Below, in pieces: positions 35,574 through 61,904 of a stretch of 64,000 bases of DNA. Positions within the stretch are counted from its first letter, which is position 1. Each line of letters starts with the position of its first letter. The position numbers were made by a program, and so were the translations under genes. A model generated the notes under the pieces. It had not been told where the DNA came from and searched no databases. It worked only from the letters and a program-made list of their open reading frames with translations. Where the stretch lies: positions 62,001 to 126,000 of the IMG/VR virus record IMGVR_UViG_3300044644_001125; one strand, written 5' to 3'.

Positions 35574-35867
35574 TTAATCGATGGTTCTAACTGCTCTGAC
35601 GTATCCGTCACCGTAACTCTTACCGTAGTAACTCTGAATCCCGATTGACATATGATTACTCCATGCGTTGACATCATTATACTCAGTAGATGACCAGTAG
35701 TAATCTTCCTCAAACTCATTTTCCGATTCATAAATCTGCGTTAGTTCGTCTGTGGTTGGTAAACGCCATCCTGTTTTCTCGTTGATATTAAGCGAAAAGC
35801 AGTATTGGCTGGCATCATACCAGTTGGCTTGAATCTCTGTTTCTTTTGGTGCGATTTCAATGTTCAT
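35574..35867 (-). CDS. Mini DUF1566/C-lectin-fold protein
   Basis: W.DA..YC...GWRLPT..EL...YWSSTE...VRAVR. Confidence 0.8.
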   Translation of the reverse strand: MNIEIAPKETEIQANWYDASQYCFSLNINEKTGWRLPTTDELTQIYESENEFEEDYYWSSTEYNDVNAWSNHMSIGIQSYYGKSYGDGYVRAVRTID

Positions 35868-35941
35868 ATCTTTTACTCCGTAGTGCTTGTTAAGGTGGGT
35901 ACATTCTAGTTGAAATATACCCAGTTGTCAACTATTTGTTT

Positions 35942-36202
35942 TTAGATTATTCTGGTTTGTTTTATTACTGCACATTCGATTCTATCTGCTGAAATTTCTT
36001 CACCAAACTCGCCATCCGTGCCTTTGAATAGTACAGTGCTACCAGCTACTTCAACTAAAGCAACCTCGACCACTTCGCCACAATCTTTAACATATATTTG
36101 ATAGTCTTTGGCAACCTCGTAATCGATTGAATCCGCATAATCCGAGTATTCTACCAAGTATGGCATGATTTCAGCTAAGGTGGTTTCTGTCATTGTGTAC
36201 AT
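35942..36202 (-). CDS. Early protein (paralog A)
   Basis: MYTMTETT...IECAV shared with 36916-37179. Confidence 0.75.
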   Translation of the reverse strand: MYTMTETTLAEIMPYLVEYSDYADSIDYEVAKDYQIYVKDCGEVVEVALVEVAGSTVLFKGTDGEFGEEISADRIECAVIKQTRII

Positions 36203-36915
36203 GGATATTCTCCGTAGTGCTTTGTTAAGGTGGGTATATTCTAGTTGAAATATACCCAGTTGTCAAGTTATCTTTTAGGTTAAATCGTGTTCTAATTTAG
36301 GGTATGTTGCGCGTAAGGTTTCAATCTTTGCTATTAAGGCAGTTATATCTGCTACTATCTCGTCCCTAGCAGTGACTTCACTCTCTGTCAGTGACTTTAA
36401 GTAATCAGTGTCATAGATGTCAAACATAGCTTTAATGTCACGTCTGTATGACTGTACCATGCTATAAAGGTCTGACCGTTTTTGAATGCCGTTCCAGTAT
36501 AAACTACTCATTGGCTTTACTCCGTAGTGCTTTGATAAGGTGGTGATAGTTTAATTGAAAACTATCACATTGTCAATCTTTTTTACCCGTGAGTTAGTTC
36601 TGCCTCAGCATCTTCTAGTGCATCAGCGACTTCTTCTTTAAAGTTGATATTATGACAATCACAGTAACGAATAATATCTACTAACAAATCTGCTACGGTT
36701 GTTTCATAACCATAATCTTCTAATTTTAATATTGCCGCAATCTTTTCAACACCAGTGTAAAAAGAAAACTTTTTAAATACTTCTTCTCCTTCTGGCATTT
36801 CCTGTAGTTCTGCTAACACAAGTTTAATCGAATTGTTCATGTTGTTTACTCCGTAGTGCTTTGTTAAGGTGGGTATATTCTAGTTGAAATATACCCAGTT
36901 GTCAACTATTTGTTT

Positions 36916-37179
36916 TTAGATTAGTCTGTTTTGTTTCATTACAGCGCATTCAATACTATTGACTTTGGCAGTACCGCATTTACCACCACCAATGTTTCTG
37001 AATGTCACGCTATCACCTAAGACTTCTACTGTTCCTACTTCTACCACATCACCAAACTCTTTTACATAGAGTTGAATATGACGTGCTGGTTCGTATTGGA
37101 AGAATCCATTGTCCTCCTCGTCAAACAATTCCAAGTAAGGTAATAAATCAGCAAAGGTGGTTTCTGTCATTGTGTACAT
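36916..37179 (-). CDS. Early protein (paralog B)
   Basis: Paralog of 35942-36202. Confidence 0.75.
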   Translation of the reverse strand: MYTMTETTFADLLPYLELFDEEDNGFFQYEPARHIQLYVKEFGDVVEVGTVEVLGDSVTFRNIGGGKCGTAKVNSIECAVMKQNRLI

Positions 37180-37246
37180 GGATATTCTCCGTAGTGCTTT
37201 GTTAAGGTGGGTACATTCTAAAAGAAAATACCCACCATGTCAATCT

Positions 37247-37960
37247 TTATTTTGTGCGAATAACGAATCCGCTAGTATCTTTTTTCGCGCGTCCTTTGGC
37301 TTTCAATCCAATAACCAAGTCTAGGTTAGTATTATTGAATCTTAAGTCATCCAAGTCACCATCAACTACAGGAACACCATTCCAAGTGGCGGGTACTTCA
37401 TCGAATACCACTGCAATAGAGTAACCTTGTTCCAATGCTTTCATTACGTCTGCATCGTTTGATTCTGCTCTACTGAATGTTAAATGGTAGTTACCTAGGT
37501 GCTTAACCTTACGATTAAGAATCTTACTGTAGTCGTAGAATTGTACTGTAGGGAAGTGTTCAAACACGTTCTTACCACCAACGTAAATGTTTTCCCATAG
37601 AATGTCACTTGTACCATTTAAACGGAATACAGGTGTCATACCTTTACGCTCTGCTTGTTTAATGGCTTTTGTTATATCAGTGATTAAGGTTTCCATGAAA
37701 ACCTCTCTGTTTGTTTTAAAGAACACGGTTCTACGTTTACGAGCCTCTTGTACCGCGTTAGTGGTTTCACCTGCTTTAAACATACCACCATGTCCAGCAG
37801 TATTCAAACAAGCCGCTCTGCATCCAGCAGTAGCCTTTGGGCAAGTGTTCATTACACCAGATAAGTCACTTGGTGCTAGGTGAAGAATGTAGGATTTATA
37901 ACCTTGTGATTCACCTTTAATGATTTTAAGGTTTGAAGTAGTGAGAAGTGAAAATGCCAT
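37247..37960 (-). CDS. Gp88-like Fe-S protein
   Basis: CPKATAGCRAACL, RLNGTSD, QFYDYSK, YHLTFS, GDLDDLRF, GLKAKG. Confidence 0.75.
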   Translation of the reverse strand: MAFSLLTTSNLKIIKGESQGYKSYILHLAPSDLSGVMNTCPKATAGCRAACLNTAGHGGMFKAGETTNAVQEARKRRTVFFKTNREVFMETLITDITKAIKQAERKGMTPVFRLNGTSDILWENIYVGGKNVFEHFPTVQFYDYSKILNRKVKHLGNYHLTFSRAESNDADVMKALEQGYSIAVVFDEVPATWNGVPVVDGDLDDLRFNNTNLDLVIGLKAKGRAKKDTSGFVIRTK

Positions 37961-38031
37961 TGTAGTAACTCCGTAGTGCTTTGTTAAGGTGGGTACATTG
38001 TATTCTCAATGTACCCATTTGTCAAATCTTT

Positions 38032-43770: not shown

Positions 43771-44373
43771 TTAGTCAAAAACAAACAACTGCTTAACGGT
43801 TTTAGCTCTAGTTAAGGCTGGGTAATCACCATACCAGTTCTTATAACAAATTCTGAAACTAGTCGCATTGGCATATCCACACTTACTAGCAATGTCATCT
43901 ACTGAAGCATATCGACCACTATCCAACAACGACTTAGCCAATGTCATACGCACATCTCTACTTACCATAGAAAACGTGTTATCAAAGAAGGCACTAAACA
44001 AAGCATCTACCTTATGCACAGGTAACCCAGCTGCCAAGTATACCCCTTCCTTATCCACACCAGCCTCAATCTTAGCTACTAACTTCTGAATCAATGCCAA
44101 GTCACTCATCTGATAACCAGCAGCTGCCACTCTCTCAGTTAAATCAGCAGCAGTTGGCTTGTATCGCATGTTAGTATATAGGGTCTGCAACGCAGTATTC
44201 ACTAATAATGAATTACCAGACATCAACCCACTACGCAATTCCGCTACCGGTAAAGTTTTACCTAGGGCTAAACCCAACTCCACATGAAACGCACTTGCCT
44301 CTTCTTCAGTCAACCCTTCTGCCGCTGCCCAACTAAATGTTTTAACTGCTTCGATTTTAATCATTGTATACAC
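43771..44373 (-). CDS. AraC-type HTH protein
   Basis: RMTLAKSLL..SVDDIASKCGYANATSFRICYKNWYGDYP. Confidence 0.75.
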   Translation of the reverse strand: MYTMIKIEAVKTFSWAAAEGLTEEEASAFHVELGLALGKTLPVAELRSGLMSGNSLLVNTALQTLYTNMRYKPTAADLTERVAAAGYQMSDLALIQKLVAKIEAGVDKEGVYLAAGLPVHKVDALFSAFFDNTFSMVSRDVRMTLAKSLLDSGRYASVDDIASKCGYANATSFRICYKNWYGDYPALTRAKTVKQLFVFD

Positions 44374-44900: not shown

Positions 44901-45605
44901 TTATGCGTGTACTAACTCTGCCAACGCTTTCTTACCCTTCTCACGCTGCGCATTCTGTCTGTACTCCAATGGCGAAACACCCATCAACTGCCCAAAAGCA
45001 CTGCGGAACCCGGCTTTAGAAAATGCCAATGATTTTGCCACATCCGAGATCTTAGCAATTGACCCATCTTCTAACATCTTAGCACCACGCATCAAGGTAA
45101 TCTCACGATGCGTAGATGCAAACGTACCCTCAAAGAATACTTCGAATAACTTCTCAAACTGGAATGGTCTCAATCCCAAGTCTCGTTGCATCTTATCCTG
45201 CTTTAAGTTAACATAGGTAGATAACATAGTCACTACGTTCTTTGCTACTGATAACTCTTCACCAGTAAATCCTGCAGCAGCAATACGACCTGCCAAGTCA
45301 GATTCTTCTGGGGTATACTTCGTACCAGTATAAAGTTCACCTAGGGCCTGTTTAGCCAACTTGATGTCACTGCTAGATGGTGCAGCCTTAGCTACCACCT
45401 TCTTTACGTCAGGTTGTACCACTGGGTCTACTACCTCAGCACTAGCCTTTAACTCAGCCACCGGTAACTTCGTATGGGTTTGTCCCAGTGCAATTGTAAA
45501 GTCTTTAAGGAACTGCTCCGCTTCTTCCCTACTAGCATTTACTCCTGCCTTCCAATTGTATGTTTCTACGGTAATAGTGTGCTTTGATACTTGAACTAAA
45601 CTCAT
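44901..45605 (-). CDS. AraC-type HTH protein
   Basis: KISDVAKSLAFSKAGFRSAFGQLMGVSPLEYR. Confidence 0.8.
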   Translation of the reverse strand: MSLVQVSKHTITVETYNWKAGVNASREEAEQFLKDFTIALGQTHTKLPVAELKASAEVVDPVVQPDVKKVVAKAAPSSSDIKLAKQALGELYTGTKYTPEESDLAGRIAAAGFTGEELSVAKNVVTMLSTYVNLKQDKMQRDLGLRPFQFEKLFEVFFEGTFASTHREITLMRGAKMLEDGSIAKISDVAKSLAFSKAGFRSAFGQLMGVSPLEYRQNAQREKGKKALAELVHA

Positions 45606-46180
45606 GGTTTATCCTTGTTGTGGTTGTGAAAGATTGTATGTTACTCTGTTTTCTACTTGCTGTCAACTTCTTTTTGCGATTTTCTCCCTGGGAAAACTTT
45701 GAAATCTTCCTAAAAGATAACTTTTCTACAATACCCAACATAACCAAATCCTCTACAGGCCTTGAATTTACTGGGTTCCTTATTTCTTCCATCTTCAAAA
45801 CATTTTCAACTTTTTACAGGGAGAAAAACAGTACCTAAAAGATGATTTTCGTTCTAGTAATAATGCGGCCTGTAGCCCAGGGAACTCGGCTTCAACTTTC
45901 TCTAGGGGAGAAAGTCATCTTTTTTACTAATACCAACATCCTCTTTATGTTAGGTCTAGTAACAGATAAGGCAATCTGCACTGCATCGTCCTCTATCCAC
46001 AAGTTAACATACGGATTATCGTAGTACATATCATTAACATCCGCTATAGTCAAAGGTCTCCAGTGTTCAGCTTGGGCGAATGCGTATAGCTTCGCTTCCG
46101 TGTATGTCAACGGTATTGGTGCTATATGGGTTGTTTCTTGAGTTTCTTGGGTCGCGAGCACCGATAGGTGCGAGCCATTG

Positions 46181-46468
46181 TCAGTTGACATCTCGCACCG
46201 CCCGTATACTTGCTACCCTAGTCTTAACTATTCTACTAGTACTATTGTCACTGAAACTATGTGCTAACGCAAAGTTCTCCGCTTCATCCGAACTCCAGTA
46301 GTTAGATAGCGTAAAGTCGTTATCTTGCTTGTATATGTCGATAAGTTCCGCTAACGTCGGCAATCTCCAGTTATCGTGCTCATTTACTCGCATACTCTTT
46401 ATTATAAGGGTGGCCTCGTACCAATCTCCAAACATTTCAGCCTCCCTAGGTGATACTTCTATACTCAT
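46181..46468 (-). CDS. Mini DUF1566/C-lectin-fold protein
   Basis: NWRLPTLAEL, YWSS, IRAVRD. Confidence 0.75.
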   Translation of the reverse strand: MSIEVSPREAEMFGDWYEATLIIKSMRVNEHDNWRLPTLAELIDIYKQDNDFTLSNYWSSDEAENFALAHSFSDNSTSRIVKTRVASIRAVRDVN

Positions 46469-46868: not shown

Positions 46869-47156
46869 TTAGAGGTCTCTGACTGCTCTTACATAGCCGT
46901 CATTGTTCTTACTGTATTGATACTGGCAGCCATTACCGAAGTTCAGACCTGCTACTCGGAAGTCATCCCATACATCAGATGACCAGTAGTAGGCAGGAGC
47001 GAAATCGTTTTTTGATCTTCCTATTATAATGAGTTCTTCCTCGGTAGGTAAACGCCATCCAGTTTTGTTGTTTGTATTGAGTGCGAAGCAGTAGAGTTTT
47101 GCATCTTCCCACGTGAGTTTTGCTACAGTTTCTTTAGGTGCTATTTCGAATTTCAT
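46869..47156 (-). CDS. Mini DUF1566/C-lectin-fold protein
   Basis: GWRLPT, YWSS, YVRAVRDL. Confidence 0.8.
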   Translation of the reverse strand: MKFEIAPKETVAKLTWEDAKLYCFALNTNNKTGWRLPTEEELIIIGRSKNDFAPAYYWSSDVWDDFRVAGLNFGNGCQYQYSKNNDGYVRAVRDL

Positions 47157-47470
47157 GTTAAGTCTCTTACTGCACGCACGTAGCTGATGTAATTCTTGCC
47201 GTAGTTACTGAGCTGAACACCATTCGATAAATTCTGACACCAGGCGTAGTTAGCATTGTACTCAGAAGACGACCAGTAGAAGGAATCAACAAAGTCCCAG
47301 TAGTAGGTACAGCCAAAGTCATTTTTGTATTCATAGATATGATTTAATTCATCTTTAGTGGGTAATCGCCATCCAGTCTTACCATCGATATTAAGAGAAA
47401 AGCAGTAGAGCTTGGCATCAAACCAATTGAGAAATGCCTCTGTTTCTTTTGGACTTATTTCGAATTTCAT
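47153..47470 (-). CDS. Mini DUF1566/C-lectin-fold protein
   Basis: GWRLPT, YWSSSEYNANYAW, YVRAVRD. Confidence 0.8.
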   Translation of the reverse strand: MKFEISPKETEAFLNWFDAKLYCFSLNIDGKTGWRLPTKDELNHIYEYKNDFGCTYYWDFVDSFYWSSSEYNANYAWCQNLSNGVQLSNYGKNYISYVRAVRDLT

Positions 47471-48891: not shown

Positions 48892-49308
48892 TTAGTCAAG
48901 GCTATTGATGAAATCGGTATATTTGGTTTTGTATTTTGGGTTAAGTTGAATCGCTGGTTCGCCTAGTTCGAAACGCCCTTTAATAACTTCTGAAGCATAC
49001 CAGTAAGAGTATGATGCACCAGTTGCAATCGCTGGTTCGCCTAGTTCGAAACGTCCATTAATAAAATCAGCATATTCATAAGATGTTTCTGCGTCGGTTG
49101 CAATGGCAGGTTCGCCTAGTTCAAAACGTCCATTGAGTATACTACACGCATAACAGTAAGCACTTCTCGGATCTGATGCAATAATCTCTACAAGTTCTGG
49201 AATGCGAGTATGCGTTTCCTCGTCGGTGTAAGCCTGGCGAATAGTGTCTAAAATATCGAGTGCTGCAAGCGGTGTTGGTTTAGAAGGTAAGGTGAGTTGA
49301 AAAGTCAT
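48892..49308 (-). CDS. Internal-repeat protein
   Basis: Three GRFELGEPAI repeats. Confidence 0.75.
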   Translation of the reverse strand: MTFQLTLPSKPTPLAALDILDTIRQAYTDEETHTRIPELVEIIASDPRSAYCYACSILNGRFELGEPAIATDAETSYEYADFINGRFELGEPAIATGASYSYWYASEVIKGRFELGEPAIQLNPKYKTKYTDFINSLD

Positions 49309-49356: not shown

Positions 49357-49608
49357 TTAGGATGTCAAGTGTTTTTCATTATCTTTTAGATCTCTTACTG
49401 GTATGCAGGTTGCTGTATTATGATCAAAGTAATTGCAATTTTGAAAAAGTACATTGTACCGGTCTGGTAGTTCAAAGACGTATTCTTTATCTGTCGGTAA
49501 TCGCCATCCAATTTTACCATCAATATTAAGTGAGAAGCAATAGACCAATGCTTCCGAGTAGGTTATTTCTTCTTTGTGATATTCTTCTGGTGCTATTTCG
49601 ATGGCCAT
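49357..49608 (-). CDS. Mini DUF1566-like protein
   Basis: YCFSLNIDGKIGWRLPT...IPVRDL. Confidence 0.75.
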   Translation of the reverse strand: MAIEIAPEEYHKEEITYSEALVYCFSLNIDGKIGWRLPTDKEYVFELPDRYNVLFQNCNYFDHNTATCIPVRDLKDNEKHLTS

Positions 49609-49704: not shown

Positions 49705-50424
49705 TTAGCAGTTCCACTTTCTCAGTGCCAGTGCTTTTCTGGTTGGCTTGCCATGTTCATCCTTCATTGGTCCTTTCATACCACTCATTCTAGCACAGAA
49801 ACTTTTACGTCGTTTGGCTGCTTTGCTACCTGGTTTGAGTTTACTTGGTTTAGTAGTGACTGCTGTTTGAAGTTTACTTCCAGGGTGTTCTCTGCGATAG
49901 CTAGCTACACCTTTCTTGTTCAAACCACCTCGTTTGTTCTTGCCTTCTTTACGTTGCCAAGCAGCTGTTTCAAAGAGTTCACGATCACTGACTGATTCAA
50001 AGTCTTCCCAAATGACGTCACTATCAACGTTATGTTGTATGGCTAAACTTTCTACCATGTCTTCGATCATGTCGAACATCTCGTCAACAGTTGGGTTGAC
50101 TCCTTGGTCTTCTTGACTTTGTAGGTAATCCCAAACAGAAACCAGCATGCTTTCTGCTTTTGCGATTTTCTCTTGAGCCCATTCTGGTAGGTTTTCATTG
50201 TCGTCAATTGTATCGAGAAGCCCATCAACTGCTCTTCGAAGCGTATGAAGATTGCTGTGAGCCATCCCAGCTTCGTCATCATATTCTGCATTGAAGTTTT
50301 CGTTTGGTACACAGTTATTGACTCGGATACCACCTTTCATCTTAGTACCTTCTTTGTGTTTGCCCTTCCAACAACTTGGGTCTAGGCGTTGTTTTGATTC
50401 TGTAATTAGTTCACTGATGCGCAT
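49705..50424 (-). CDS. Modular putative head internal protein with DUF6321-like C-terminus
   Basis: MRISELITE start; AAWQRKEGK..GGLN..G...RKSFCARM...W.C; TAAATA upstream. Confidence 0.7.
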   Translation of the reverse strand: MRISELITESKQRLDPSCWKGKHKEGTKMKGGIRVNNCVPNENFNAEYDDEAGMAHSNLHTLRRAVDGLLDTIDDNENLPEWAQEKIAKAESMLVSVWDYLQSQEDQGVNPTVDEMFDMIEDMVESLAIQHNVDSDVIWEDFESVSDRELFETAAWQRKEGKNKRGGLNKKGVASYRREHPGSKLQTAVTTKPSKLKPGSKAAKRRKSFCARMSGMKGPMKDEHGKPTRKALALRKWNC

Positions 50425-50493: not shown

Positions 50494-51210
50494 ATGAGAA
50501 TCGAAGAAATACTAAGTGAAGTAAAACTAAAGCCACGCATATCAAATAAGTCTACAAGTGGCGTTTTGAAATCACCGAACTTACAGTTTATCGCAACTGG
50601 TACCCAAGCTATTGCGTATTATCACAAAACGCATCCGAATACTGTTGTTAAAGTTGCTGCGGTATCTGGTGAAGGAGACCCCATTTGGCAGTTCTTGCGT
50701 ATTTGCATCAATAATCAAAAGAATCCGTATTTTCCAAAAATCTTTAACTACAAGATATTCAATTTAAAATCGATAACCGATGAAGAAGAAGCGTACTTGG
50801 AAAACAATCCAGAGTTTGAATACTTACCTATTCATGATAATAGAAAGATGCAAATACTAATGGTAACTGAACGGCTTGATGAAATCACTGCACCTGAGTT
50901 TGAACAAGCATTGAGTAAACTAGGATTAGACAAATTGATCAACTATACTAAAAGAAAATGGCAACCTGGTTACAGCTATCCATTAACAACAGAACTAATA
51001 TGGAAAATGTTAATGGATAAAGAAGTTGGTAGACGGTATTTACGGTCTGAATCAACTGACAAGCACTTTTCGGATGCCATTAGGCTATTGAGTCCATTGA
51101 TAGCAACCGGTAGAATGTATGCTGATGTTCATCTTGGGAATATGATGTTGAGAAAAGATGGGCATTTGGTATTTAATGATCCACTAGCTATTACCCTTTC
51201 AGATGAATAG
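50494..51210 (+). CDS. Protein-kinase-like protein, putative internal protein
   Basis: GTQAIAY Gly-loop, VVK, MVTERL, DVHLGN, VFNDP; starts MRIEEILSE; TAAATA upstream. Confidence 0.7.
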   Translation: MRIEEILSEVKLKPRISNKSTSGVLKSPNLQFIATGTQAIAYYHKTHPNTVVKVAAVSGEGDPIWQFLRICINNQKNPYFPKIFNYKIFNLKSITDEEEAYLENNPEFEYLPIHDNRKMQILMVTERLDEITAPEFEQALSKLGLDKLINYTKRKWQPGYSYPLTTELIWKMLMDKEVGRRYLRSESTDKHFSDAIRLLSPLIATGRMYADVHLGNMMLRKDGHLVFNDPLAITLSDE

Positions 51211-51234: not shown

Positions 51235-51480
51235 CTAATCGACATCTCGCACTGGATAGCAAAAGTACTTTACGGTATCCAGTTCCGAATCCATCAATGA
51301 TGGTTTGTCTTCTTGCACCCAACCAATAGACAGCACTGGTTTGCTATTGCTATCGCGGAAGTCTTTATACGATGGTATTCTCCAACCAATCTTACCATCG
51401 ATGTTTAATGAAAAGCAATATAGTATTGATTCGTTCCACGTTATTTTTTTGTGGTATTCTTCTGGTGCTATTTCGATCAT
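51235..51480 (-). CDS. Mini DUF1566-like protein
   Basis: YCFSLNIDGKIGWRIPS...YPVRD. Confidence 0.75.
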   Translation of the reverse strand: MIEIAPEEYHKKITWNESILYCFSLNIDGKIGWRIPSYKDFRDSNSKPVLSIGWVQEDKPSLMDSELDTVKYFCYPVRDVD

Positions 51481-51534: not shown

Positions 51535-52341
51535 TCAACTTAAACTTGATTGATAATCAGTAAGATGTTGGTAGATTGATTTCAAGTATCTGCGGTATAC
51601 TTTCTCGTAGCCTGGTTCTTGTCTATTCTTAAAATCAGAATAGGTAGTTGCTTGCTTTGGAATTTCTTTTAGGAATACAGTAATAGCAGTGGCTTGTTCA
51701 GCTACAGGTAACTTGTGTATCTTATTGATTAGATCCGATGCAGCTTCTTGTGCGTATGCTGCTATTTCATCAGGTTGAGATTTGTAGATTTCGTGTGCTC
51801 TTACTTTCTCTTCTTCTGATTTGAATTCATCTTGAATCAAGGCTGTAAAGAATTTGATTTTGTCTTTTTCAATATAGCCACGTTTGTATTTGTATCGTTG
51901 TCCGTGACTTACTTGCGTAGCATGAGTAACTTCATGCAGGAATACTGAAGTCAAGTAACCAATGATAGTATCTAGTTCAGTAGAAACGTCAATCTTTTCT
52001 GTCAACTGTTTATATAGCAGTGTGATAAGTTTTGAAAGTACTTTAGGTGAAATAGTTATCGTGTTGGTGTCTTCGAGGTACTGGCCGGTTCCATTGGGTA
52101 GGGATTTAAACTGAATAGTAACCTCACTGTTTGTTATTTGTTTTGCGTAATCTGTTAGAATAGGTTTGATCGCATTAACAAACGCAGTATTGTACTTGAC
52201 CATAAACTGCATATCCATTTTCGCTGGCGGTTGCGTTGGCGTTTTGAATATCGTTGCAACAGCGGTGTGTAATGCTCGGTTAATCGTTGGTGTGTAGTTT
52301 GATAACGATATACGTTCACTTAAGATTTCTGCGATTCTCAT
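51535..52341 (-). CDS. Zincin-like metallopeptidase, putative internal protein
   Basis: HEVTHATQ (HExxH) and downstream PDEIAAYA; starts MRIAEILSE. Confidence 0.7.
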   Translation of the reverse strand: MRIAEILSERISLSNYTPTINRALHTAVATIFKTPTQPPAKMDMQFMVKYNTAFVNAIKPILTDYAKQITNSEVTIQFKSLPNGTGQYLEDTNTITISPKVLSKLITLLYKQLTEKIDVSTELDTIIGYLTSVFLHEVTHATQVSHGQRYKYKRGYIEKDKIKFFTALIQDEFKSEEEKVRAHEIYKSQPDEIAAYAQEAASDLINKIHKLPVAEQATAITVFLKEIPKQATTYSDFKNRQEPGYEKVYRRYLKSIYQHLTDYQSSLS

Positions 52342-53150
52342 ACTGATGCCTTTCTTGTAAGGATGAAGCTATCACCGTAGGTTTCGATATTCCAAGTATT
52401 AGAAAAGAACTTGTTAAGGATTTTAGAATAGACTGCGAATCTACGATTTTGTCTAACGTGTACGCCTTCTGGTGAGTAACTAGTGATCACTGACATGAAT
52501 CGTTCTAGTTGTTTGAAGGCTTCGTTCATCTCTGGATATTTGCTGAGTTTCATGTCAGCAGCTTTGCGTATTTGCCAGTATAGTTTATCAAACTCACTTG
52601 AACTATATTTTTCAACTGGCTGGGTAAGATATTGTTTGATTGCCTCGATTGTTTCTAATACCAGGTTGTACTTATTCTTTCTAATCTCATCTTCTTCAGT
52701 TTTTAGTAACTCGTTTGTCACTGAACTTAAACCTTGCAATGATGCGAGTAATTCTCTTTTAGGTCTTTCTACTGGTATATTGAATTTGTGTTTGGTATCA
52801 CTAGGAGTTGAATGCGCAGAGAAAGTGCACCGGTCGATTTTGGCTTTGTCGAGATAGGTTTTAACGATGTAGCCAACCCCAGATAGAATATCAAAATCAT
52901 TATCAATATCTTTTCCTTCAGTCGATGCGGTATCATACATTGTACCATTAACATAGAAAACAACATCGGTTGTTTTCTCATCGCCATCGGTTGTTGTTTT
53001 GAATTGAATGTCTACTTGATTACCTTTGTTTGTGGTAAAAGTACGTTGTGCTATTTTGTTCTTAGAACCTTGCATACCGGCTTTTGATACAGTTGAACTT
53101 TTAACTGTAGTTAAAGGTTTCTTTGGTTCTAGTAGTTCGTGAATTCGCAT
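52338..53150 (-). CDS. Putative internal protein
   Basis: MRIHELLE start; ATAAATA upstream. Confidence 0.55.
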   Translation of the reverse strand: MRIHELLEPKKPLTTVKSSTVSKAGMQGSKNKIAQRTFTTNKGNQVDIQFKTTTDGDEKTTDVVFYVNGTMYDTASTEGKDIDNDFDILSGVGYIVKTYLDKAKIDRCTFSAHSTPSDTKHKFNIPVERPKRELLASLQGLSSVTNELLKTEEDEIRKNKYNLVLETIEAIKQYLTQPVEKYSSSEFDKLYWQIRKAADMKLSKYPEMNEAFKQLERFMSVITSYSPEGVHVRQNRRFAVYSKILNKFFSNTWNIETYGDSFILTRKASV

Positions 53151-54850: not shown

Positions 54851-55722
54851 TCAATCATCTTTTAGATCTCTTACTGGCGTTACGTACCACTTACCCTTAC
54901 CAGAAGTTCTTCCAATGCACCAGCACATAGAATTGGTAATTCCCTTAGTATTCATGTATTCGTCGATGGTTGGTAATCTCCAACCGATTTTACCATCGAT
55001 GATTAACGAAAAGCAATACATCAATGCTTCCTCATACGTCATTTCGAATTTTGTTCGTTCACCTATTTCAATCATCTTTTAGATCTCTTACTGGAGTAAC
55101 ATACCACACAATATTCGCTGTAGGTCTACCAACGTACCACGAGCCGTATATATACTTATTGCCGTAATATTCCTCTTGCGTTGGCAATCTCCAACCTATC
55201 TTACCATCAATATTAAGTGAGAAGCAATACATAACGGCTTCTTCATGCGACAGTTCGACTTCTGTTCTTATGGCTACTTCAATCATTTCAAATCTCTTAC
55301 TGGAGTTACGTACCATTTAAGACCCATATTTCTACTAAGATGCCAAGACTCGGTAATCTTCGAATTCTGCATGTATTCGTTACTTGTTGGCATTCTCCAA
55401 CCAATCTTACCATCTACGTTTAATGAAAAGCAATACATCCTTGCTTCGTCGTATGTCATTAGAAATTTAGTTCGTTCACCTATTTCAATCATCGCAAATC
55501 CCTCACTGGCGTAACTCGTCGTGGAAAAGTACTATCACTTGCCAACTTGTTTTCGTACCATCCGGCAATAGGTGGAATGATTTCCCATTCATCGTAGCTT
55601 GGTAATCTCCAACCAATCTTACAATCATAAGATAAGGTAAAGCAATACAGTTTTGCTTCGGAATATGACATGGCGGATTCTGACAGTGGTGCTAGTTCAA
55701 TCCCAAATTCTTCAATTATCAT
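54851..55722 (-). CDS. Four tandem mini DUF1566-like genes (55489-55722, 55283-55492, 55068-55286, 54851-55075)
   Basis: Each has EA..YCF.L...GWR.P...TPVRDL, with overlapping stop/start junctions. Confidence 0.8.
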
Positions 55723-56095: not shown

Positions 56096-56142
56096 TTGAT
56101 TTTCCTTTGGTTATTTTCTAAAAGATAATAGCTTACTTTGGT

Positions 56143-57256
56143 TTAATTGTCAATGCTTCGTACTGGGATAATTGTATGCGTTTCTGTAGTCCAATTGTCA
56201 TTGATGTCTTCATCATACCAATAACCGTCTTCATTTGTCATTATAACAAGCGACGTCAGGCATTCTTCACATGTGGGTAATCTCCAACCATCACCTAAAC
56301 AAAAACAATACAAGACTGCTTCTGTGATGGTACCCTCTTTCCACAATACTCTAGGTGCTATTTCAATCATCTTTTAGATCTCGTACTGGGGCAAGCAACC
56401 AGTTACCTTTACTGGGTCTGGGTCTACCAATATACCAACAACCCATTAATTGATCGTTACCATACCATTCATCTTTGGTTGGTAATCTCCATCCAGTCTT
56501 ACCATCTATATTCAACAAAAAGCAATACATAATTGCTTCCTCGTAAGATAGTCTTAATTCACGGTCAATTGGTGCTATCTCAATCATCGTCAGGTACCTC
56601 GCGAACAGGTTGTAAAAAGTAAACGTCATCAGGATTGTACCACTGTTTACGGTCAACGTACAACCAATCACGGTCAACGTACCACCAATCACTGTACATT
56701 TCGTATAGTAAGCATTCATCCAAGGTTGGAAAACGCCAACCATCAGCTAGGCAAAACAGGTAGAATTTTGCATCTTCGTAAGTTACTCTTGTTGTGGTTG
56801 GCTTACCCATTTCTAATCTAATCATCTTTAATATCTCGCACTGGTCTAACAAAAAACGTACTAACTTGTGAGATTCTATCAACATACCAAGAACCTTGCA
56901 ATTCATACTCAATGTATTCGGCTTCAGTTGGCAATCTCCAACCATCACCCAAGCAAAAACAATATAAGATTGCCTCGTCATACGTGATTCGTTTGTTATA
57001 GTACTTCCCAATCTCAATCATCGTCAACATCTCTCACTGGTACAAGTGGGCATAACCCAACACTATGAATCGAGTCTTCAGCAACCCAGGCATGTATTAT
57101 GGTTGGCGATTCACCGTGGATAACAGCCATGATGTTGTTAAGTTCACGTCTAGTCGGTAGTCGCCATCCAATATCTAATTTTAATAGATGCAATTCTGCA
57201 TCGGATCGTGATATATTATGGGTTGGGCGTAATTCTATTGGCGATACTTCTATCAT
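56143..57256 (-). CDS. Five tandem mini DUF1566-like genes (57014-57256, 56818-57021, 56580-56825, 56363-56587, 56143-56370)
   Basis: Each has GWR(L/F)PT...W...PVR; starts corrected to MIE/MIR; GATGATTGA/GATGATTAG overlaps. Confidence 0.8.
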
Positions 57257-57813: not shown

Positions 57814-57815
57814 CA

Positions 57816-59780
57816 ATGGGTTTTACTCAAGACTTTCTTACTAGTAGAAGAAACAACGACGATGGTAGTACCAGAATCGGTGAACATGATCGCCTCTGGT
57901 ATTCGAGCTCAGACAACACCATCAGGATTGGTGACAATGTTACGCCTGGTGGTATTATTGTCTGTGGTGGCGGTACAGGTGATGGAATTTATGTATTACC
58001 AACTGCCAGTACTACCGTAAAAGGTGGTGTTAAAATTGACGGAACTTCTATCACAATCAATAACGAAGTTATTAGTGGATTTGATGGTAACTACAATTCG
58101 TTGTCTAACAAACCAGTTCTGTTTAGTGGTAACTATAATGATCTAACGAATAAACCAGTTTTATTCAGTGGGTCATATAACGACTTAACTAATAAGCCTA
58201 CCATCCCAGCAGCACAGGTTCAATCGGATTGGTTGGCAACAAGTGGCGTTGCCGAAATCCTAAACAAACCAGCTATACCAGATATCACCGGTATAACAGA
58301 AGTGTTTGCGGCAACCGGTGAACCAATGGGCCATGCCGACAAAACCCATTCGTTGATTTCATTTGATGATGCAAGTAGAACTTTCACTATATCACCGGTG
58401 AATAGTTCATTTGATATCTGGGTAAAAGGAACTAAGTGGGTAATCACCAACTCAAGATCAGTAACTATACCAGATAATACTGGCCTGTATTACATTTATT
58501 TTGATGCCACTGGTACGTTGCATTATAAAACAACGTTCTTTGATTGGCCAAATGATTGTATGACAGCTTATGTTTATTGGAATAAACTAACCGGTAAAGC
58601 GCCATACGTTGCAGATGAAAGACATGGTATAACCTTAGATTGGCAAACCCATGAATACCTGCACAGAACACGTGGTGCAGCAATTGCAAGTGGTTTCACT
58701 GCCTCCAATTTTATAATAAACGGTGATGGTTCTCTCAATTCACATCTTCAATTAGATATAGAATCTGGTACGTTCTTTGATGAAGATTTACAAGTTGATG
58801 TTATTAGTACCAATACACCAGTAGCAAATTCTTGGCAACAAGACTTAGCTGGCCCTGCACGAATACCAATGTTCTATATTAACAGTGGCGGTGGTTGGGT
58901 AATGGATCCAGCTACTGACTTTCCAGTAAAACAAGGTTTGTTACCAAAGTATAACTTGTATAGCGGTGGTAACTGGACTACACCTGATATCGATAATAAC
59001 AAGTTTGGTGTTAGTTTCATCTTAGCAACCAATAACATCAATTATCCTGTTATTGGAATTATTGGTCAATCATCGCATGCCAACCAAGGCGATGCAGAAG
59101 CAGTTAATTTCACTGATTTGTCATTACCCGGATTCCCAGTTGTAGAATTAAGACAGCTATATAAACTGGTATTCCAATGCAAAACAAGTTATACCAATAC
59201 GGTACATGCTAGACTTACATCGATATTTGACTTAAGAAGTTTTAGTAGCACAACATCGGCAATGGCTACTTATACCGATCATGGATCTTTAAGTGGATTA
59301 CTAGATGATGATCATCCGCAATATCTACTAAGAACCGATGTGAGTGCACTTAATGGTCCCGCATTTAGTGTGTATCGAGATGCAGTGCAAACCATACCAA
59401 CTGATGTGTTAACCGCAATGACTTGGACTGTCGAAGAGTACGATACCCATAACTGCGTAACATCAACTAGATTCACACCAACCGTTGCAGGTTACTATGC
59501 CCTTGTTGCTACTGTTAGAATTGATGGTGGTATCGGTACAGGTGAACGTATGATTTGTATTAAGAAAAATGGTACAGAATATCGACGAGGTATGAACTCT
59601 AAAGGTACTGCTAGTGTTGGAGATAGTTGGTTTCAACTAGATATTTCATGCCAAGTACATGCTAATGGTACTGGTGATTACTTTGAAGTGTTTGTTCAAC
59701 AGGGTGCTGGTGCTGATAGAAATACGACAAGTGGACAACCATTCACTGCATTCCAAGGATGCATGTTGCGTGCTGCATAG
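57816..59780 (+). CDS. Tail fibre / receptor-binding-like protein
   Basis: IRIGDNVTPGG, LPTAS...GGVKI, repeated FSG.YNDL.NKP, DDHPQY, C1q/gp37-like C-terminal domain. Confidence 0.75.
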   Translation: MGFTQDFLTSRRNNDDGSTRIGEHDRLWYSSSDNTIRIGDNVTPGGIIVCGGGTGDGIYVLPTASTTVKGGVKIDGTSITINNEVISGFDGNYNSLSNKPVLFSGNYNDLTNKPVLFSGSYNDLTNKPTIPAAQVQSDWLATSGVAEILNKPAIPDITGITEVFAATGEPMGHADKTHSLISFDDASRTFTISPVNSSFDIWVKGTKWVITNSRSVTIPDNTGLYYIYFDATGTLHYKTTFFDWPNDCMTAYVYWNKLTGKAPYVADERHGITLDWQTHEYLHRTRGAAIASGFTASNFIINGDGSLNSHLQLDIESGTFFDEDLQVDVISTNTPVANSWQQDLAGPARIPMFYINSGGGWVMDPATDFPVKQGLLPKYNLYSGGNWTTPDIDNNKFGVSFILATNNINYPVIGIIGQSSHANQGDAEAVNFTDLSLPGFPVVELRQLYKLVFQCKTSYTNTVHARLTSIFDLRSFSSTTSAMATYTDHGSLSGLLDDDHPQYLLRTDVSALNGPAFSVYRDAVQTIPTDVLTAMTWTVEEYDTHNCVTSTRFTPTVAGYYALVATVRIDGGIGTGERMICIKKNGTEYRRGMNSKGTASVGDSWFQLDISCQVHANGTGDYFEVFVQQGAGADRNTTSGQPFTAFQGCMLRAA

Positions 59781-59816
59781 GACTAAAAGATAATTGAAGT
59801 TAGTTTCGATTATCTT

Positions 59817-60149: not shown

Positions 60150-60178
60150 TGGATAAATATTAATAAAAGGAAAAGACA

Positions 60179-60436
60179 ATGTCACTAAACGGTATTTCAA
60201 CATTAGCAACTAGACAAGCTCGGCTTGAAGCTAAACTAAATTTGGCACAAGCAAAACGCCAAGGTAAAGTCGTAGCAGCTGATGGTACTATCACTGGTTC
60301 TATTGACCCAACCAAACCTTACTTTCGTGCGTTGAATGTATATGATGTAAATCTTTTACCAACTAAGTATAGTGGCAACACTTTGGTTCAAAACAGTCAT
60401 CCATTGTTGTTAAGTTTACATCACCCATGGGTATAG
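60179..60436 (+). CDS. Small late (possibly structural) protein
   Basis: ATAAATA and AAGGA upstream. Confidence 0.6.
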   Translation: MSLNGISTLATRQARLEAKLNLAQAKRQGKVVAADGTITGSIDPTKPYFRALNVYDVNLLPTKYSGNTLVQNSHPLLLSLHHPWV

Positions 60437-60454
60437 CCTCGCAATATCAATATA

Positions 60455-60982
60455 TTAGACATTCCTAACCGGAATAGTAACCCTGTTACTATCTAAATCC
60501 TCGAAGTCATATTCATCATCTTCGAATCCATAAGTGGTAACAGGCCCATCACTTGGCATTTCATAGGGACGAGAACCATACACGTGATTCTCCTCGTCGT
60601 AGAATGGTTCAGTAGATGTATACACCCAGTTTTCTTGTTTCAATGCTGTTAGTAAATTGGGTTCTGCTTGTTTACGAATAATCTCGCATTCATAAACAGT
60701 TGGTAATCGCCATCCAATCTTACCATCGATATTCAAAGAAAAGCAATACAACTTTGCATGCTCAAAAAGAAAGTCTTGACTCCAATAATCCCTCGGTGAA
60801 ATCTCAAGTTTAGCATAATCCAACTCGTCAGCTTTGTTATGTAACGCAATAGCAAATTCACGTGCAGTTGCTGTATCAACCTCACCAACTGATGCCCAAC
60901 TAATGGTAGATGGATTTACTGTTTCAAAATCAACAGAAGATATGTACGGTTCAGAAACCGTTATCAATTTTTTAACGTTCAT
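60455..60982 (-). CDS. DUF1566-like protein with N-terminal extension
   Basis: LEISP..YCFSLNIDGKIGWRLPT...IPVRN. Confidence 0.75.
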   Translation of the reverse strand: MNVKKLITVSEPYISSVDFETVNPSTISWASVGEVDTATAREFAIALHNKADELDYAKLEISPRDYWSQDFLFEHAKLYCFSLNIDGKIGWRLPTVYECEIIRKQAEPNLLTALKQENWVYTSTEPFYDEENHVYGSRPYEMPSDGPVTTYGFEDDEYDFEDLDSNRVTIPVRNV

Positions 60983-61332
60983 CGGATTGCTTCTAAGGTA
61001 ACTGAGGTTTCAGTAACAGACCAAACATGGACTGGTTTCTTTTTTGATTTAGCATATTCAATTGATTCTGATGTACTGTCAGATACTGAATCGCAAATGG
61101 CAATCAACATATCGGCTGAATCAATGATAGCATGATTTCTTTCTGGTGAATAATGTTCTGCAAATACTTGCGGTGGTCTTCTTAGATTCTTGTAAGCATA
61201 CATAACGGCATTACCATCAACACCAGATGAATGTGAAGTACTGATCTCATCCAACTGACTATAATCTTTTAGGATACGTTCGATGGTAGGATAACTAACG
61301 ATTGTGCGTGAACCAATTACTGCTGCTTTCAT
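60979..61332 (-). CDS. SLOG (YspA/DUF2493-like) protein
   Basis: AVIGSR, GVD, RN..IID.AD.LIA, ST..SIEYA....KPV. Confidence 0.7.
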   Translation of the reverse strand: MKAAVIGSRTIVSYPTIERILKDYSQLDEISTSHSSGVDGNAVMYAYKNLRRPPQVFAEHYSPERNHAIIDSADMLIAICDSVSDSTSESIEYAKSKKKPVHVWSVTETSVTLEAIR

Positions 61333-61374
61333 GTGAACACCTCTCTGTTAAAAGTTGGTAGTGTATACTGGTAT

Positions 61375-61904
61375 TTAAGGATTGTCAATAGTTCTTACTG
61401 CTCTGACTGACAAGTTCTGATCAACCAAGTAATCGTCATCAGATGACCAATACCAAGCCCAGTGCGAAGATTCGGAATTTTTAGAAAGTTCTTTAAGCTC
61501 GTCACTTGTTGGTAATCTCCAACCTATCTTACCATCAACACTAAGAGAAAAGCAATACAATTTTGCAGCATCTAATGAATTAGTGAATGTTTCGGTTTCG
61601 ATTGGTGACAACTCAATCATAGCGTTCTGACTGGTCTAGCCTGCGAAAGCATTGTGGGTAAGTGCTCTATTGTAGTGACTCCACCGTATTGGATATGGAA
61701 GATGCAACCATGATTGTTGTCTTTTGCATTGATCCAGCATGAGCCTGGAACTTCAATATCCATTCGTCCTAGTTCTTGCATTTCAGATATAGTAGGTAAA
61801 CGCCATCCAGTTTTACCGTCGATGTTTAATGAAAAACAATATACAATTGCTTCATCAATAGTTAAGGTCTTTTCGTATTCAGGTGGTGATAATTCAAAGT
61901 GCAT
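61375..61904 (-). CDS. Two tandem mini DUF1566-like genes (61617-61904, 61375-61620)
   Basis: YCFSL..DGK.GWRLPT...VRT. Confidence 0.8.

What the first reader, a model, noticed from the sequence alone, without database searches (positions are those of the whole stretch)
35574..61904. About 21 paralogous stand-alone mini DUF1566/C-lectin-fold genes with conserved scaffold and hypervariable C-terminal half
Seen: mostly 65-110 aa proteins with consensus MIEIxP..(W/Y)xEAxxYCFxL(NIDGKx)GWRLPT..[variable]..W..[variable]..PVRD, without signal peptides, in tandem translationally coupled runs (46.2-47.8, 54.8-57.3, 59.8-61.9 kb) and singletons; a degenerate copy lies at about 45.9-46.1 kb. Established: DUF1566/CLec folds are the typical hypervariable ligand-binding targets of DGRs. 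Inference: a repertoire of small binders diversified by duplication, serving as anti-defence decoys or swappable adhesin tips (several flank the tail-fibre-like gene).
Basis: partly seen in the sequence, partly recalled or inferred. Interest (0 to 1): 0.75.

Follow-up and report, generated by a model that had tools for sequence, protein, structure and literature searches.

The report
Giant mini-lectin gene family in jumbo phage
A 327 kb freshwater jumbo phage gives about 7% of its genome to 82 small, cytoplasmic, lectin-fold (Lcl_C/DUF1566) genes, 21 of them in this window. This looks like the largest paralogous gene family reported in any phage, and it is probably an early-expressed set of binding proteins whose targets are unknown.

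Summary
The window holds 20 clear copies and 1 degenerate copy of a stand-alone mini Lcl_C/DUF1566 gene. The whole 327 kb phage genome holds 82 genes (83 domains), about 7.1% of its DNA. AlphaFold models are confident (pLDDT 97 and 91) and best match the Legionella Lcl C-terminal domain, then C-type-lectin-like folds. A 68–86 aa "short" subtype lacks the β3–β4 hairpin.

The variable half coincides with the ligand-binding face of Lcl. It is not hypermutating: orthologues in sister strains show dN/dS of about 0.25 in both scaffold and variable half. The genome has no reverse transcriptase, so no DGR is present. Diversity comes from old duplications (77% identity at most), gene conversion within the scaffold, and gain, loss or replacement of cassettes between strains.

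The genes lie in accessory regions rich in consensus σ70 promoters, in translationally coupled arrays, and lack signal peptides. That favours early intracellular binders (host takeover or counter-defence, inferred) over adhesin tips. Phages sharing the neighbouring fibre-like gene have 0–1 copies. The function remains untested.

The parts
35574..35867 (-). family gene, long type, 97 aa (singleton)
   Evidence: Pfam Lcl_C 52.2 bits, above cut-off; family HMM 116 bits
45892..46191 (-). degenerate family copy, 99 aa ORF; only the scaffold half is recognisable and GWRLPT is changed to HWRPLT
   Evidence: family HMM 14.5 bits, HMM positions 15-69
46181..46468 (-). family gene, long type, 95 aa; a sigma70-like promoter lies at 46523-46495
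46869..47156 (-). family gene, long type, 95 aa (third gene of a coupled trio)
47153..47470 (-). family gene, long type, 105 aa (ATGA overlap on both sides)
   Evidence: Pfam Lcl_C 57.2 bits
47467..47760 (-). family gene, long type, 97 aa; this is the protein modelled
   Evidence: AlphaFold pLDDT 97.2; best PDB match 8q4e_A, TM 0.83
49357..49608 (-). family gene, short type, 83 aa; a perfect TTGACA-16-TATAAT promoter lies at 49669-49642
51235..51480 (-). family gene, short type, 81 aa
54851..55075 (-). family gene, short type, 74 aa; this is the short-type protein modelled
   Evidence: AlphaFold pLDDT 91.2; best PDB match again 8q4e_A, TM 0.65
55068..55286 (-). family gene, short type, 72 aa (8-nt ATGATTGA junction)
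55283..55492 (-). family gene, short type, 69 aa
55489..55722 (-). family gene, short type, 77 aa (first gene of a 4-gene run)
56143..56370 (-). family gene, short type, 75 aa
56363..56587 (-). family gene, short type, 74 aa (true start at MIEIAP)
56580..56825 (-). family gene, short type, 81 aa (true start at MIRLEMG)
56818..57030 (-). family gene, short type, 70 aa
57014..57256 (-). family gene, short type, 80 aa; most divergent clear copy; first gene of a 5-gene run
   Evidence: family HMM 45.5 bits
59817..60149 (-). family gene, long type, 110 aa (true start at MNIELAP)
60455..60982 (-). family gene with an N-terminal extension of about 55 aa, 175 aa in all (domain at 60455-60823); ATGA-coupled to the unrelated upstream gene 60979-61332
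61375..61620 (-). family gene, short type, 81 aa
61617..61904 (-). family gene, long type, 95 aa (ATGA-coupled to 61375-61620)
55068..55086 (-). example of the stereotyped gene-gene junction (reads GATCTAAAAGATGATTGAA on the minus strand): D-L-K-D-D-stop of one gene overlaps M-I-E of the next. It is the G-variant of a motif (CTAAAAGATRAT) present 184 times in the genome

Best explanation
The window holds part of a lineage-specific expansion of stand-alone, minimal Lcl_C/DUF1566 (C-type-lectin-like fold) proteins in an uncultured freshwater jumbo myovirus. The genome has 82 genes, about 7% of its DNA and roughly one gene in six. Shown: each protein is a single lectin-like domain of 68-131 aa, usually acidic, with no signal peptide or membrane segment. 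The fold determinants are conserved (first strand, helix 1, GWRLPT turn, the Arg-Glu pair, one Trp, last strand). The second half, which carries the ligand-contacting lysines in Legionella Lcl, differs between copies; in the short subtype it is pared down to a loop. Copies are old (at most 77% identical), each is kept under purifying selection, and the set differs between sister strains through gain, loss and replacement of genes and through gene conversion in the conserved scaffold DNA. The genes form translationally coupled arrays in non-structural regions dense in consensus sigma70 promoters. Inferred: host RNA polymerase transcribes them early, and they act in the cytoplasm as a repertoire of small specific binders for variable host molecules, most plausibly in host takeover or counter-defence, with repertoire breadth tracking host diversity. 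The targets are unknown.
For: Family and fold: Pfam Lcl_C above cut-off for long copies. Profile hit to the Lcl C-terminal domain 8q4e, E 1.3e-6, and TvpA, E 0.11. Models with pLDDT 97.2 and 91.2. Foldseek best hit 8q4e_A, TM 0.83, then C-type-lectin-like domains. Census: 83 domains; 82 genes, 23,190 nt, 7.1% of the genome. Cytoplasmic and acidic: median pI 4.8; no hydrophobic window above 1.37. Variable region: entropy map; Lcl lysines K369, K380, K385 and K391 fall in it (alignment; residues named in PMC11162425). Purifying selection in both halves: omega 0.24 and 0.26 over 19 orthologue pairs. No DGR: no RVT_1 in the genome. Early-type context: 96 strong sigma70 promoters versus 13-26 in shuffles, co-localised and co-oriented with the family and absent from structural blocks; all eight promoters matching 11-12 of 12 positions in 45-62.5 kb lie on the coding strand; examples upstream of array-leading genes. 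Coupling: 21 junctions of -8 nt and 18 of -4 nt. Turnover between strains with 85-98% identical flanks. Exact tracts up to 76 nt between diverged paralogues. Weak association: a 3-domain homologue lies beside a Tad2-like gene on another phage-like contig.
Against: There are no expression-timing data. Only one metatranscriptome holds 14% of the sampled words of one array. Promoter matches are consensus scans: the total count of weak matches in the region is not above shuffles, and only the near-perfect ones are enriched. No homology to any characterised anti-defence protein was found. The host is unknown, so no target could be tested. In other phages this fold is typically the C-terminal tip of tail fibres, so a virion role is not excluded. 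In the related 306 kb phage the domains are fused behind a coiled coil, an architecture also seen in adhesins.
Confidence: 0.45

Rival explanations
1. The proteins are virion-associated lectin modules: exchangeable tail-fibre tips, decoration proteins or soluble adhesins that bind host surface glycans and so broaden host range. Virion proteins need no signal peptide.
For: In BFVD the same fold is mostly the C-terminal domain of long tail-fibre, collagen-repeat or S74 proteins. Lcl itself is a glycan-binding adhesin. In the related phage G001 the domains are fused in tandem behind an N-terminal coiled coil. A tail-fibre-like gene lies between the window arrays.
Against: The genes lie outside the structural blocks and behind sigma70-type promoters. 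The fibre-like gene is on the opposite strand. Phages sharing that gene carry 0-1 family copies, including a 96%-complete 356 kb genome with none. No docking domain is present, and the conserved residues are generic fold determinants. The proteins are acidic, unlike the basic glycosaminoglycan-binding face of Lcl.
Confidence: 0.17
2. The expansion is largely a by-product of recombinogenic cassettes: conserved scaffold DNA and repeated boundary elements drive duplication and spread, and most copies have little individual function.
For: A 12-mer motif present 184 times (0.3 expected) forms the junction or stop codon of 23-26 family genes. Exact tracts up to 76 nt occur between paralogues. Copy number varies between strains. 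The set-up is analogous to PeSL-mediated shuffling in T4-like phages.
Against: Orthologues show purifying selection in both halves, omega about 0.25. Only one clearly degenerate copy was found in the window. Copies are old and none exceeds 77% identity, so this is long-term retention rather than recent runaway amplification. Reading frames are intact across 82 genes.
Confidence: 0.12
3. The copies are subunits that assemble into Lcl-like homo- or heterotrimers, so translational coupling would serve stoichiometric co-assembly and the repertoire would be combinatorial.
For: The closest solved relative is an obligate trimer whose DUF1566 part carries nearly all subunit contacts. The genes are tightly translationally coupled.
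Against: The homotrimer prediction gave 'no answer', score 0.00, which is neither support nor refutation. The short type lacks much of the sheet.
Confidence: 0.15
4. The family is a set of targets of a diversity-generating retroelement (DGR).
For: Papers link DUF1566 to DGRs (titles and abstracts, not opened), and the variable region lies in the C-terminal half.
Against: The 92%-complete genome has no reverse transcriptase. Long identical tracts lie in the scaffold, not as template/variable repeat pairs. Orthologous variable halves are conserved.
Confidence: 0.02

Closest known systems
Legionella pneumophila Lcl C-terminal domain (PDB 8q4e; Pfam Lcl_C / DUF1566, PF07603)
   Same: Same Pfam family and fold (TM 0.83, 29% identity). 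The WRLPT...E motif is conserved, including the equivalents of the Arg338-Glu344 salt bridge. As in Lcl, no disulfides or Ca2+ motif. The variable half corresponds to the face carrying the ligand-binding lysines of Lcl.
   Different: Lcl is a secreted, trimeric, collagen-stalked adhesin with a basic glycosaminoglycan-binding surface. These proteins are stand-alone, 68-131 aa, acidic and without an export signal. Trimerisation is unresolved, and the short type lacks the beta3-beta4 hairpin.
Stand-alone viral 'Lcl C-terminal domain-containing proteins' of uncultured phages (ESM Atlas clusters; BFVD A0A6J5PVG6)
   Same: Same size (97-115 aa), single domain, viral origin. Dozens of all-viral clusters exist.
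   Different: None is characterised. Comparable arrays were seen only in this lineage (strain-level contigs such as L029, about 10 genes in 10 kb). GenBank phages gave only single weak hits, and clade relatives have 0-11 copies.
Lineage-specific expansions in jumbo phages (for example about 35 zinc-ribbon genes in Bacillus phage G; Iyer et al. 2021, PMC7824862)
   Same: A small domain is amplified many-fold in one jumbo-phage lineage and is presumed to serve in biological conflict.
   Different: More than twice as many copies. The fold is different: that survey found no C-type-lectin-fold FGS domains in 224 jumbo phages. Here the strain-to-strain turnover is documented.
PeSL (promoter-early stem-loop) cassettes and hyperplastic regions of T4-like phages (PMC2839356, PMC4122927)
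   Same: Strong sigma70 promoters, conserved intergenic repeats and stem-loops flank small non-essential genes. Indels and replacements separate close relatives.
   Different: This is not a T4-like phage. The repeats differ: a 12- to 15-nt motif with stops in all three frames, and a 22-nt hairpin element. The shuffled genes belong largely to one family. Breakpoints were not mapped to the repeats, and mini-circles were not tested.
DGR variable proteins with C-type-lectin folds (Mtd, TvpA)
   Same: C-type-lectin-type scaffold tolerant of variation in its C-terminal part. The family profile weakly hits TvpA (E 0.11).
   Different: No reverse transcriptase and no template repeat. Diversity is encoded in the germline as many genes rather than generated in one gene.

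Membership tests
Pfam Lcl_C (PF07603, formerly DUF1566) | HMM score at or above the curated gathering cut-off (34.9 bits) | tested here: met
   Long-type copies score 52.2 and 57.2 bits. Twenty-seven places in the genome are above the cut-off.
Pfam Lcl_C (PF07603), short-type copies | HMM score at or above the gathering cut-off | tested here: not met
   Short copies score 13.6-18.1 bits, matching only the N-terminal half of the model. They are tied to the family by the family profile (45-97 bits) and by the fold.
Pfam Lcl_C / Lcl C-terminal domain | Fold of the solved Lcl C-terminal domain (8q4e) | tested here: met
   Foldseek best hit 8q4e_A: E 7.8e-7, TM 0.83 for the long type. Also best hit for the short type, but E about 1 and TM 0.65.
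Pfam Lcl_C / Lcl C-terminal domain | Conserved W-R-L-P-T...E motif with the intradomain Arg-Glu salt bridge (Arg338/Glu344 in Lcl) | tested here: met
   W34, R35, P37 and E41 are at least 96% conserved in both subtypes. The register was confirmed on the 8q4e alignment and the paper.
Lcl-type adhesin (works like Lcl) | Trimer of C-terminal domains | tested here: inconclusive
   The homotrimer prediction returned 'no answer'.
Lcl-type adhesin (works like Lcl) | Secretion plus a basic glycosaminoglycan-binding surface (K369, K380, K385, K391) | tested here: not met
   No signal peptide or membrane segment. Median pI 4.8. The lysine positions fall in non-conserved columns.
Canonical C-type lectin domain | Two-helix, two-sheet fold with paired N- and C-terminal strands | tested here: met
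   Secondary structure of the models. Foldseek hits to snake-venom C-type lectins, CLEC9A, CD94/NKG2A and poxvirus A33 at TM 0.5-0.67.
Canonical C-type lectin domain | Conserved disulfides and Ca2+/carbohydrate motifs (EPN/QPD, WND) | tested here: not met
   Only one conserved Cys (C23). No such motifs in the consensus. Lcl likewise lacks them.
DGR target (variable protein) | Cognate reverse transcriptase in the element or genome | tested here: not met
   No RVT_1 match in the 327 kb record at E <= 1. The record is estimated 92% complete.
DGR target (variable protein) | Template/variable repeat pair with adenine-specific differences in the variable region | tested here: not met
   The longest identical tracts between copies lie in the scaffold. 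Orthologous variable halves are conserved.
PeSL-type mobile regulatory cassette system | Strong sigma70-like promoters with conserved repeats or stem-loops in intergenic spaces of variable regions | tested here: met
   96 strong promoters versus 13-26 expected, confined to accessory regions. 184 motif copies. 46 hairpin elements.
PeSL-type mobile regulatory cassette system | Indels or replacements between close relatives whose breakpoints lie in the cassettes; mini-circle formation | tested here: inconclusive
   Indels and replacements are seen and mosaic genes too, but breakpoints were not mapped to the repeats. Metagenome joints are unreliable. Mini-circles cannot be tested here.
Known anti-defence protein families | Sequence or profile homology to a characterised anti-defence protein | tested here: not met
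   Pfam and PHROGs give only Lcl_C and unknown-function PHROGs. The only link is a Tad2-like neighbour of a homologue on another contig.

The most novel reading that the evidence does not exclude
The phage carries a germline-encoded, antibody-like repertoire: about 80 minimal lectin-fold binders, each with a fixed specificity and expressed together early. Between strains the set is reshuffled by a cassette system whose boundary element (CTAAAAGATAATTGA, with stop codons in all three frames and 184 copies) also supplies the stop/start junction of the arrays. On this reading the repertoire neutralises a wide range of host defence or surface-biogenesis proteins and determines which hosts in a diverse lake community can be infected. 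It would be a new class of counter-defence or host-range system and the largest paralogous family known in a phage.
Probability: 0.2. Interest if true: 0.88.

Novelty: new variant of a known kind. Interest (0 to 1): 0.68.

Why it matters
Paralogue expansions in large DNA viruses of eukaryotes (poxvirus and herpesvirus C-type lectins, ASFV multigene families; from general knowledge) mark host-range and immune-evasion functions. Comparable cases in phages are rare: a survey of 224 jumbo phages called about 35 copies 'unprecedented'.

This case offers three things:

- **A minimal binder scaffold.** At 68-75 aa, it is a natural library of more than 80 sequence-diverse variants of one very small fold.
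- **A testable evolutionary model.** It shows diversity generated by duplication, gene conversion and cassette exchange, rather than by a DGR acting on the same fold.
- **A large set of candidate proteins.** These may be phage-host interaction or counter-defence proteins from an abundant freshwater phage lineage seen in at least 20 lake metagenome runs.

Tried and rejected
- **DGR hypothesis:** rejected. No reverse transcriptase, no template/variable repeats, conserved orthologous variable halves.
- **Recent 'accordion' amplification:** rejected. Maximum paralogue identity is 77% and the nearest paralogue is often more than 100 kb away.
- **Link to the adjacent tail-fibre-like gene:** rejected as unsupported. 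It is on the opposite strand, and the two genes do not co-occur in related phages.
- **Homotrimer prediction:** returned 'no answer', so it is not used as evidence.
- **Laying metagenome contigs on the arrays:** the joints have short sides at 80% likeness and pile up on paralogous scaffold segments, so they are not used as evidence of rearrangement.
- **GenBank phage searches:** no relative at DNA level and only five weak single-copy protein hits.
- **Rfam:** only the tRNA in the window.
- **Literature:** searches for DUF1566 / Lcl_C in phages gave only DGR papers or irrelevant hits.
- **The motif as part of sigma70 promoters:** only 8 of 96 strong promoters have CTAAAAGATRAT just upstream and 10 of 96 have it in the spacer, so it is not simply a promoter element.
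- **Surface clustering of variable residues:** could not be computed because model coordinates are not exposed. Mapping onto Lcl ligand residues was used instead.

Full report
**Observation.** An alignment reproduces the stated consensus: M-I/F-E-I-A-P ... Y-C-F-x-L-(N-I-D-G-K)-x-G-W-R-L-P-T ... W ... P/A-V-R-D. Twenty copies score 45-117 bits against a family HMM. The 'degenerate' copy at 45892-46191 scores 14.5 bits over the scaffold half only. Four ORFs have spurious N-terminal extensions; starting them at the MIE/MNIE motif gives 69-110 aa. One copy (60455-60982) has a genuine N-terminal extension of about 55 aa.

**The window holds only a quarter of the family.** The window is bases 62001-126000 of a 327,256 bp IMG/VR virus record, estimated 92% complete. 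Pfam Lcl_C matches 62 places in that record. An iterated family HMM finds 83 domains in 82 genes, totalling 23,190 nt. That is 7.1% of the genome and roughly one in six of about 479 crude ORF calls. The largest run is 17 consecutive genes at genome position 157.3-161.2 kb.

The phage is a jumbo myovirus. Its 1171-aa tail sheath is 34-46% identical to those of PA5oct, CBB, Atu_ph07 and Phosso, and it encodes ribonucleotide reductase, a DNA polymerase and many fibre genes. It comes from freshwater lakes: at least 20 metagenome runs from 18 studies, 2016-2025, hold the array at 54.8-57.3 kb.

**Family and fold.**
- Long copies (about 95-105 aa) pass the Pfam Lcl_C (formerly DUF1566) gathering cut-off. 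Short copies (68-86 aa) match only its first half, below the cut-off.
- A profile of all 83 copies hits the Legionella Lcl C-terminal domain (8q4e, E 1.3e-6) and, weakly, the DGR variable protein TvpA (E 0.11).
- AlphaFold models built on the paralogue alignment are confident: pLDDT 97.2 for the long type and 91.2 for the short type.
- Foldseek ranks 8q4e_A first for both (TM 0.83 and 0.65). C-type-lectin-like domains follow: snake-venom lectins, CLEC9A, Bdellovibrio Bd2740 C-terminal domain, poxvirus A33/A35.
- So the fold claim holds, and the short type is a stripped-down version of it.

**What is conserved and what varies.** The conserved positions are:
- strand 1 (E4, I5, A6, P7)
- helix 1 (A19, Y22, C23, F24, L26)
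- the IDGK-x-GWRLPT turn
- E41 and W58
- the last strand (V90, R94, D95)

R35 and E41 correspond to the Arg338-Glu344 salt bridge of Lcl. The Lcl paper states that conserved DUF1566 residues are mostly core residues. High-entropy positions are 8-18, 43-57 and 59-89. The short type has deleted about 51-54 and 64-80, which is the beta3-beta4 hairpin. On the 8q4e alignment, the four ligand-contacting lysines of Lcl (K369, K380, K385, K391) all fall in this variable segment. I could not compute three-dimensional clustering because model coordinates are not exposed.

The proteins are hydrophilic and mostly acidic (median pI 4.8). None has a hydrophobic window compatible with a signal peptide or membrane helix.

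**Variable but not hypervariable.** Within the genome no two copies exceed 77% identity. The median nearest-paralogue identity is 55%, and the nearest relative often lies more than 100 kb away, so the duplications are old.

IMG/VR contigs L001, L002 and L004-L009 are sister strains with 85-98% identical flanks. For 19 orthologous pairs (at least 85% identity), Nei-Gojobori estimates are:

| Region | dN | dS | dN/dS |
|---|---|---|---|
| Scaffold | 0.042 | 0.174 | 0.24 |
| Variable half | 0.027 | 0.105 | 0.26 |

Both halves are under purifying selection, and the variable half is if anything the slower one. The genome has no reverse transcriptase. This is therefore a germline repertoire of fixed variants, not a DGR-type system.

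**How the repertoire changes.**
- Sister strains differ in array content. L001 has 7 genes where this genome has 10 (236.6-240.3 kb): four are orthologues and three have no orthologue (best match 58-72%).
- L008 and L009 have three extra genes where this genome has one.
- L004-L006 have two non-orthologous genes where this genome has three.
- Some orthologues are mosaics, with an identical variable half and a diverged scaffold (dS 0.17-0.20).
- Paralogues no more than 73% identical in protein share exact nucleotide tracts of up to 76 nt. Most exact tracts of 20 nt or more start in the scaffold-coding part of the gene. This indicates gene conversion or recombination.
- In lake metagenomes, contig depth peaks on the scaffold segments and many contigs then run off into different sequences. 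That fits a large pool of variants, but the individual joints are not reliable.

**Regulatory and boundary context.**
- Near-consensus sigma70 promoters (at least 11 of 12 positions) number 96 in the genome, against 13-26 in Markov shuffles. They are co-oriented and co-localised with the family, and absent from the structural blocks.
- In 45-62.5 kb, all eight promoters matching 11-12 of 12 positions are on the arrays' coding strand. Several array-leading genes have TTGACA-16/17-TATAAT directly upstream.
- Within arrays, 21 junctions overlap by 8 nt (ATGATTGA) and 18 by 4 nt (ATGA). The Arg-Asp codons of the last strand (AGAGAT, AGGGAT, CGAGAT) sit where a Shine-Dalgarno sequence would be for the next gene.
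- The 8-nt junction is one variant of a motif, CTAAAAGATRAT (extended CTAAAAGATAATTGA), that occurs 184 times against 0.3 expected. Of these, 99 are in the 10.6% of the genome that is intergenic, and 36 supply a gene's stop codon (23 family genes, 13 others). By inspection of the sequence, it contains a stop codon in each forward frame.
- A 22-nt element (GCGAG, 4-bp stem, loop, stem, CGAGC) occurs 46 times with compensatory stem changes, often just upstream of family genes.
- This architecture resembles the PeSL cassettes that shuffle small early genes in T4-like phages. I did not map breakpoints to these repeats.

**Distribution.**
- The family profile finds about 19,000 cluster representatives. 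The top ranks are giant proteins with up to 17 tandem domains; stand-alone proteins of about 100 aa and 2- or 3-domain proteins also occur.
- The ESM Atlas holds dozens of all-viral clusters of stand-alone Lcl_C proteins of 97-102 aa. BFVD shows the fold mainly at tail-fibre C-termini.
- GenBank phages give only five weak single-copy hits.
- The related 306 kb phage G001 has 11 copies, several fused in frame behind a coiled coil.
- Phages that share the window's fibre-like gene have 0-1 copies, including a 96%-complete 356 kb genome with none. The expansion of about 80 genes is therefore lineage-specific.
- For scale, a survey of 224 jumbo phages called a 35-copy zinc-ribbon expansion 'unprecedented' and found no C-type-lectin-fold FGS domains.

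**Function.**
- *Shown:* fold, copy number, lack of export signals, purifying selection, strain-level turnover, and promoter and coupling context.
- *Inferred:* early transcription by host RNA polymerase, and action in the cytoplasm as specific binders. The most plausible roles are host takeover or counter-defence, because accessory, strain-variable, early gene sets in phages typically serve those roles. One homologue lies beside a Tad2-like gene, which is weak support.
- *The adhesin-tip reading* is weakened by the promoter context, the location outside structural modules, the opposite-strand fibre gene and the lack of co-occurrence. It is not excluded.
- *A neutral, recombination-driven expansion* is weakened by omega of about 0.25 and by the scarcity of decayed copies.
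- *Trimer or heteromer assembly* is open.
- Expression evidence is limited to one metatranscriptome with a 14% word share.

**Verdict.** The fold and 'diversified by duplication' are supported; 'hypervariable' and 'adhesin tips' are not; 'anti-defence' is plausible but untested. This is a new variant of a known kind: a known but uncharacterised domain family in an extreme, lineage-specific, cassette-like expansion that includes a minimised subtype.

Noticed in passing
genome-wide; in the window for example 49378, 54854, 55071, 56366, 59783/59809 (inverted pair just past the end of the fibre-like gene): The 12-mer CTAAAAGATRAT (extended CTAAAAGATAATTGA) occurs 184 times in the 327 kb genome against 0.3 expected. 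Copies lie in both orientations, often as inverted pairs. 99 are intergenic and 36 supply a gene's stop codon. The sequence carries a stop codon in all three forward frames. Only 8-10 of the 96 strong sigma70 promoters include it. Its function is unknown: operator, phage-specific promoter, terminator arm or recombination site.
   Followed up: partly
genome-wide; in the window for example 35567, 40482, 43748, 46154, 46817, 61952, 62017, 63862, 63904: A 22-nt element (GCGAG, 4-bp stem, loop, stem, CGAGC; for example GCGAGCACCGCTAGGTGCGAGC) occurs at least 46 times. At least 8 different stem sequences keep the pairing (compensatory changes). It is usually intergenic and often lies just upstream of family genes. 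Nothing in Rfam matches it.
   Followed up: partly
window 8975-9340 (+), 49705-50424 (-), 50494-51210 (+), 51535-52341 (-), 52338-53150 (-), 63452-63802 (-); four more elsewhere in the genome: Ten otherwise dissimilar proteins (one kinase-like, one weakly metallopeptidase-like, one with DUF6321) all begin with M-R-I-x-E/D followed by two aliphatic residues (I/L/V). This recalls, from memory, the short N-terminal capsid-targeting or protease-cleaved leader of T4 internal proteins, so they may be packaged and injected proteins.
   Followed up: partly
window 43771-44373 (-) and 44901-45605 (-): Two adjacent paralogous phage genes encode AraC-family HTH_18 regulators (44.5 bits, above the Pfam cut-off; 30.1 bits, below it). 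They are candidates for binding one of the genome-wide repeats.
   Followed up: no
genome 34.3-35.4 kb, 165.1-166.2 kb, 232.5-233.6 kb, 310.7-311.9 kb (outside the window): Four paralogous, apparently non-coding islands of about 1 kb align at about 75-80% identity to the corresponding island of sister-strain contigs (L004-L006). They are dense in the CTAAAAGATAAT motif and in short CATCTATAAGA-like repeats. They may be iteron or origin-like, or regulatory.
   Followed up: no
window 57816-59780 (+): The tail-fibre-like gene (PHROG tail-fibre match only to N-terminal NKP repeats, no Pfam domain) lies on the opposite strand between the arrays. Its second half (about 58.4-59.0 and 59.6 kb) is dense in differences between lake populations, as expected for a receptor-binding region.
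   Followed up: partly
L003:8666-9604 and L003:15620-16396 (IMGVR_UViG_3300035665_000001, 306 kb): In the related phage the same domain occurs as in-frame tandem fusions behind an N-terminal coiled-coil-like segment (312 aa with 3 domains; 258 aa with 2 full domains and a truncated middle one). Gene fusion or fission therefore separates the lineages.
   Followed up: partly
contig carrying P0014 (179,623 bp, JGI/NCBI; no DNA held): A 331-aa three-domain homologue lies immediately upstream of a PF11195 Tad2-like (anti-Thoeris) gene, with RlaP, RtcB and a nucleoside 2-deoxyribosyltransferase-like gene a few kb downstream, among many small ORFs.
   Followed up: no
window 35942-36202 (-) and 36916-37179 (-); window 48892-49308 (-): There are two further small paralogues beginning MYTMTETT. 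Separately, a 138-aa protein has three internal repeats of NGRFELGEPAI(A/Q). Functions are unknown.
   Followed up: no
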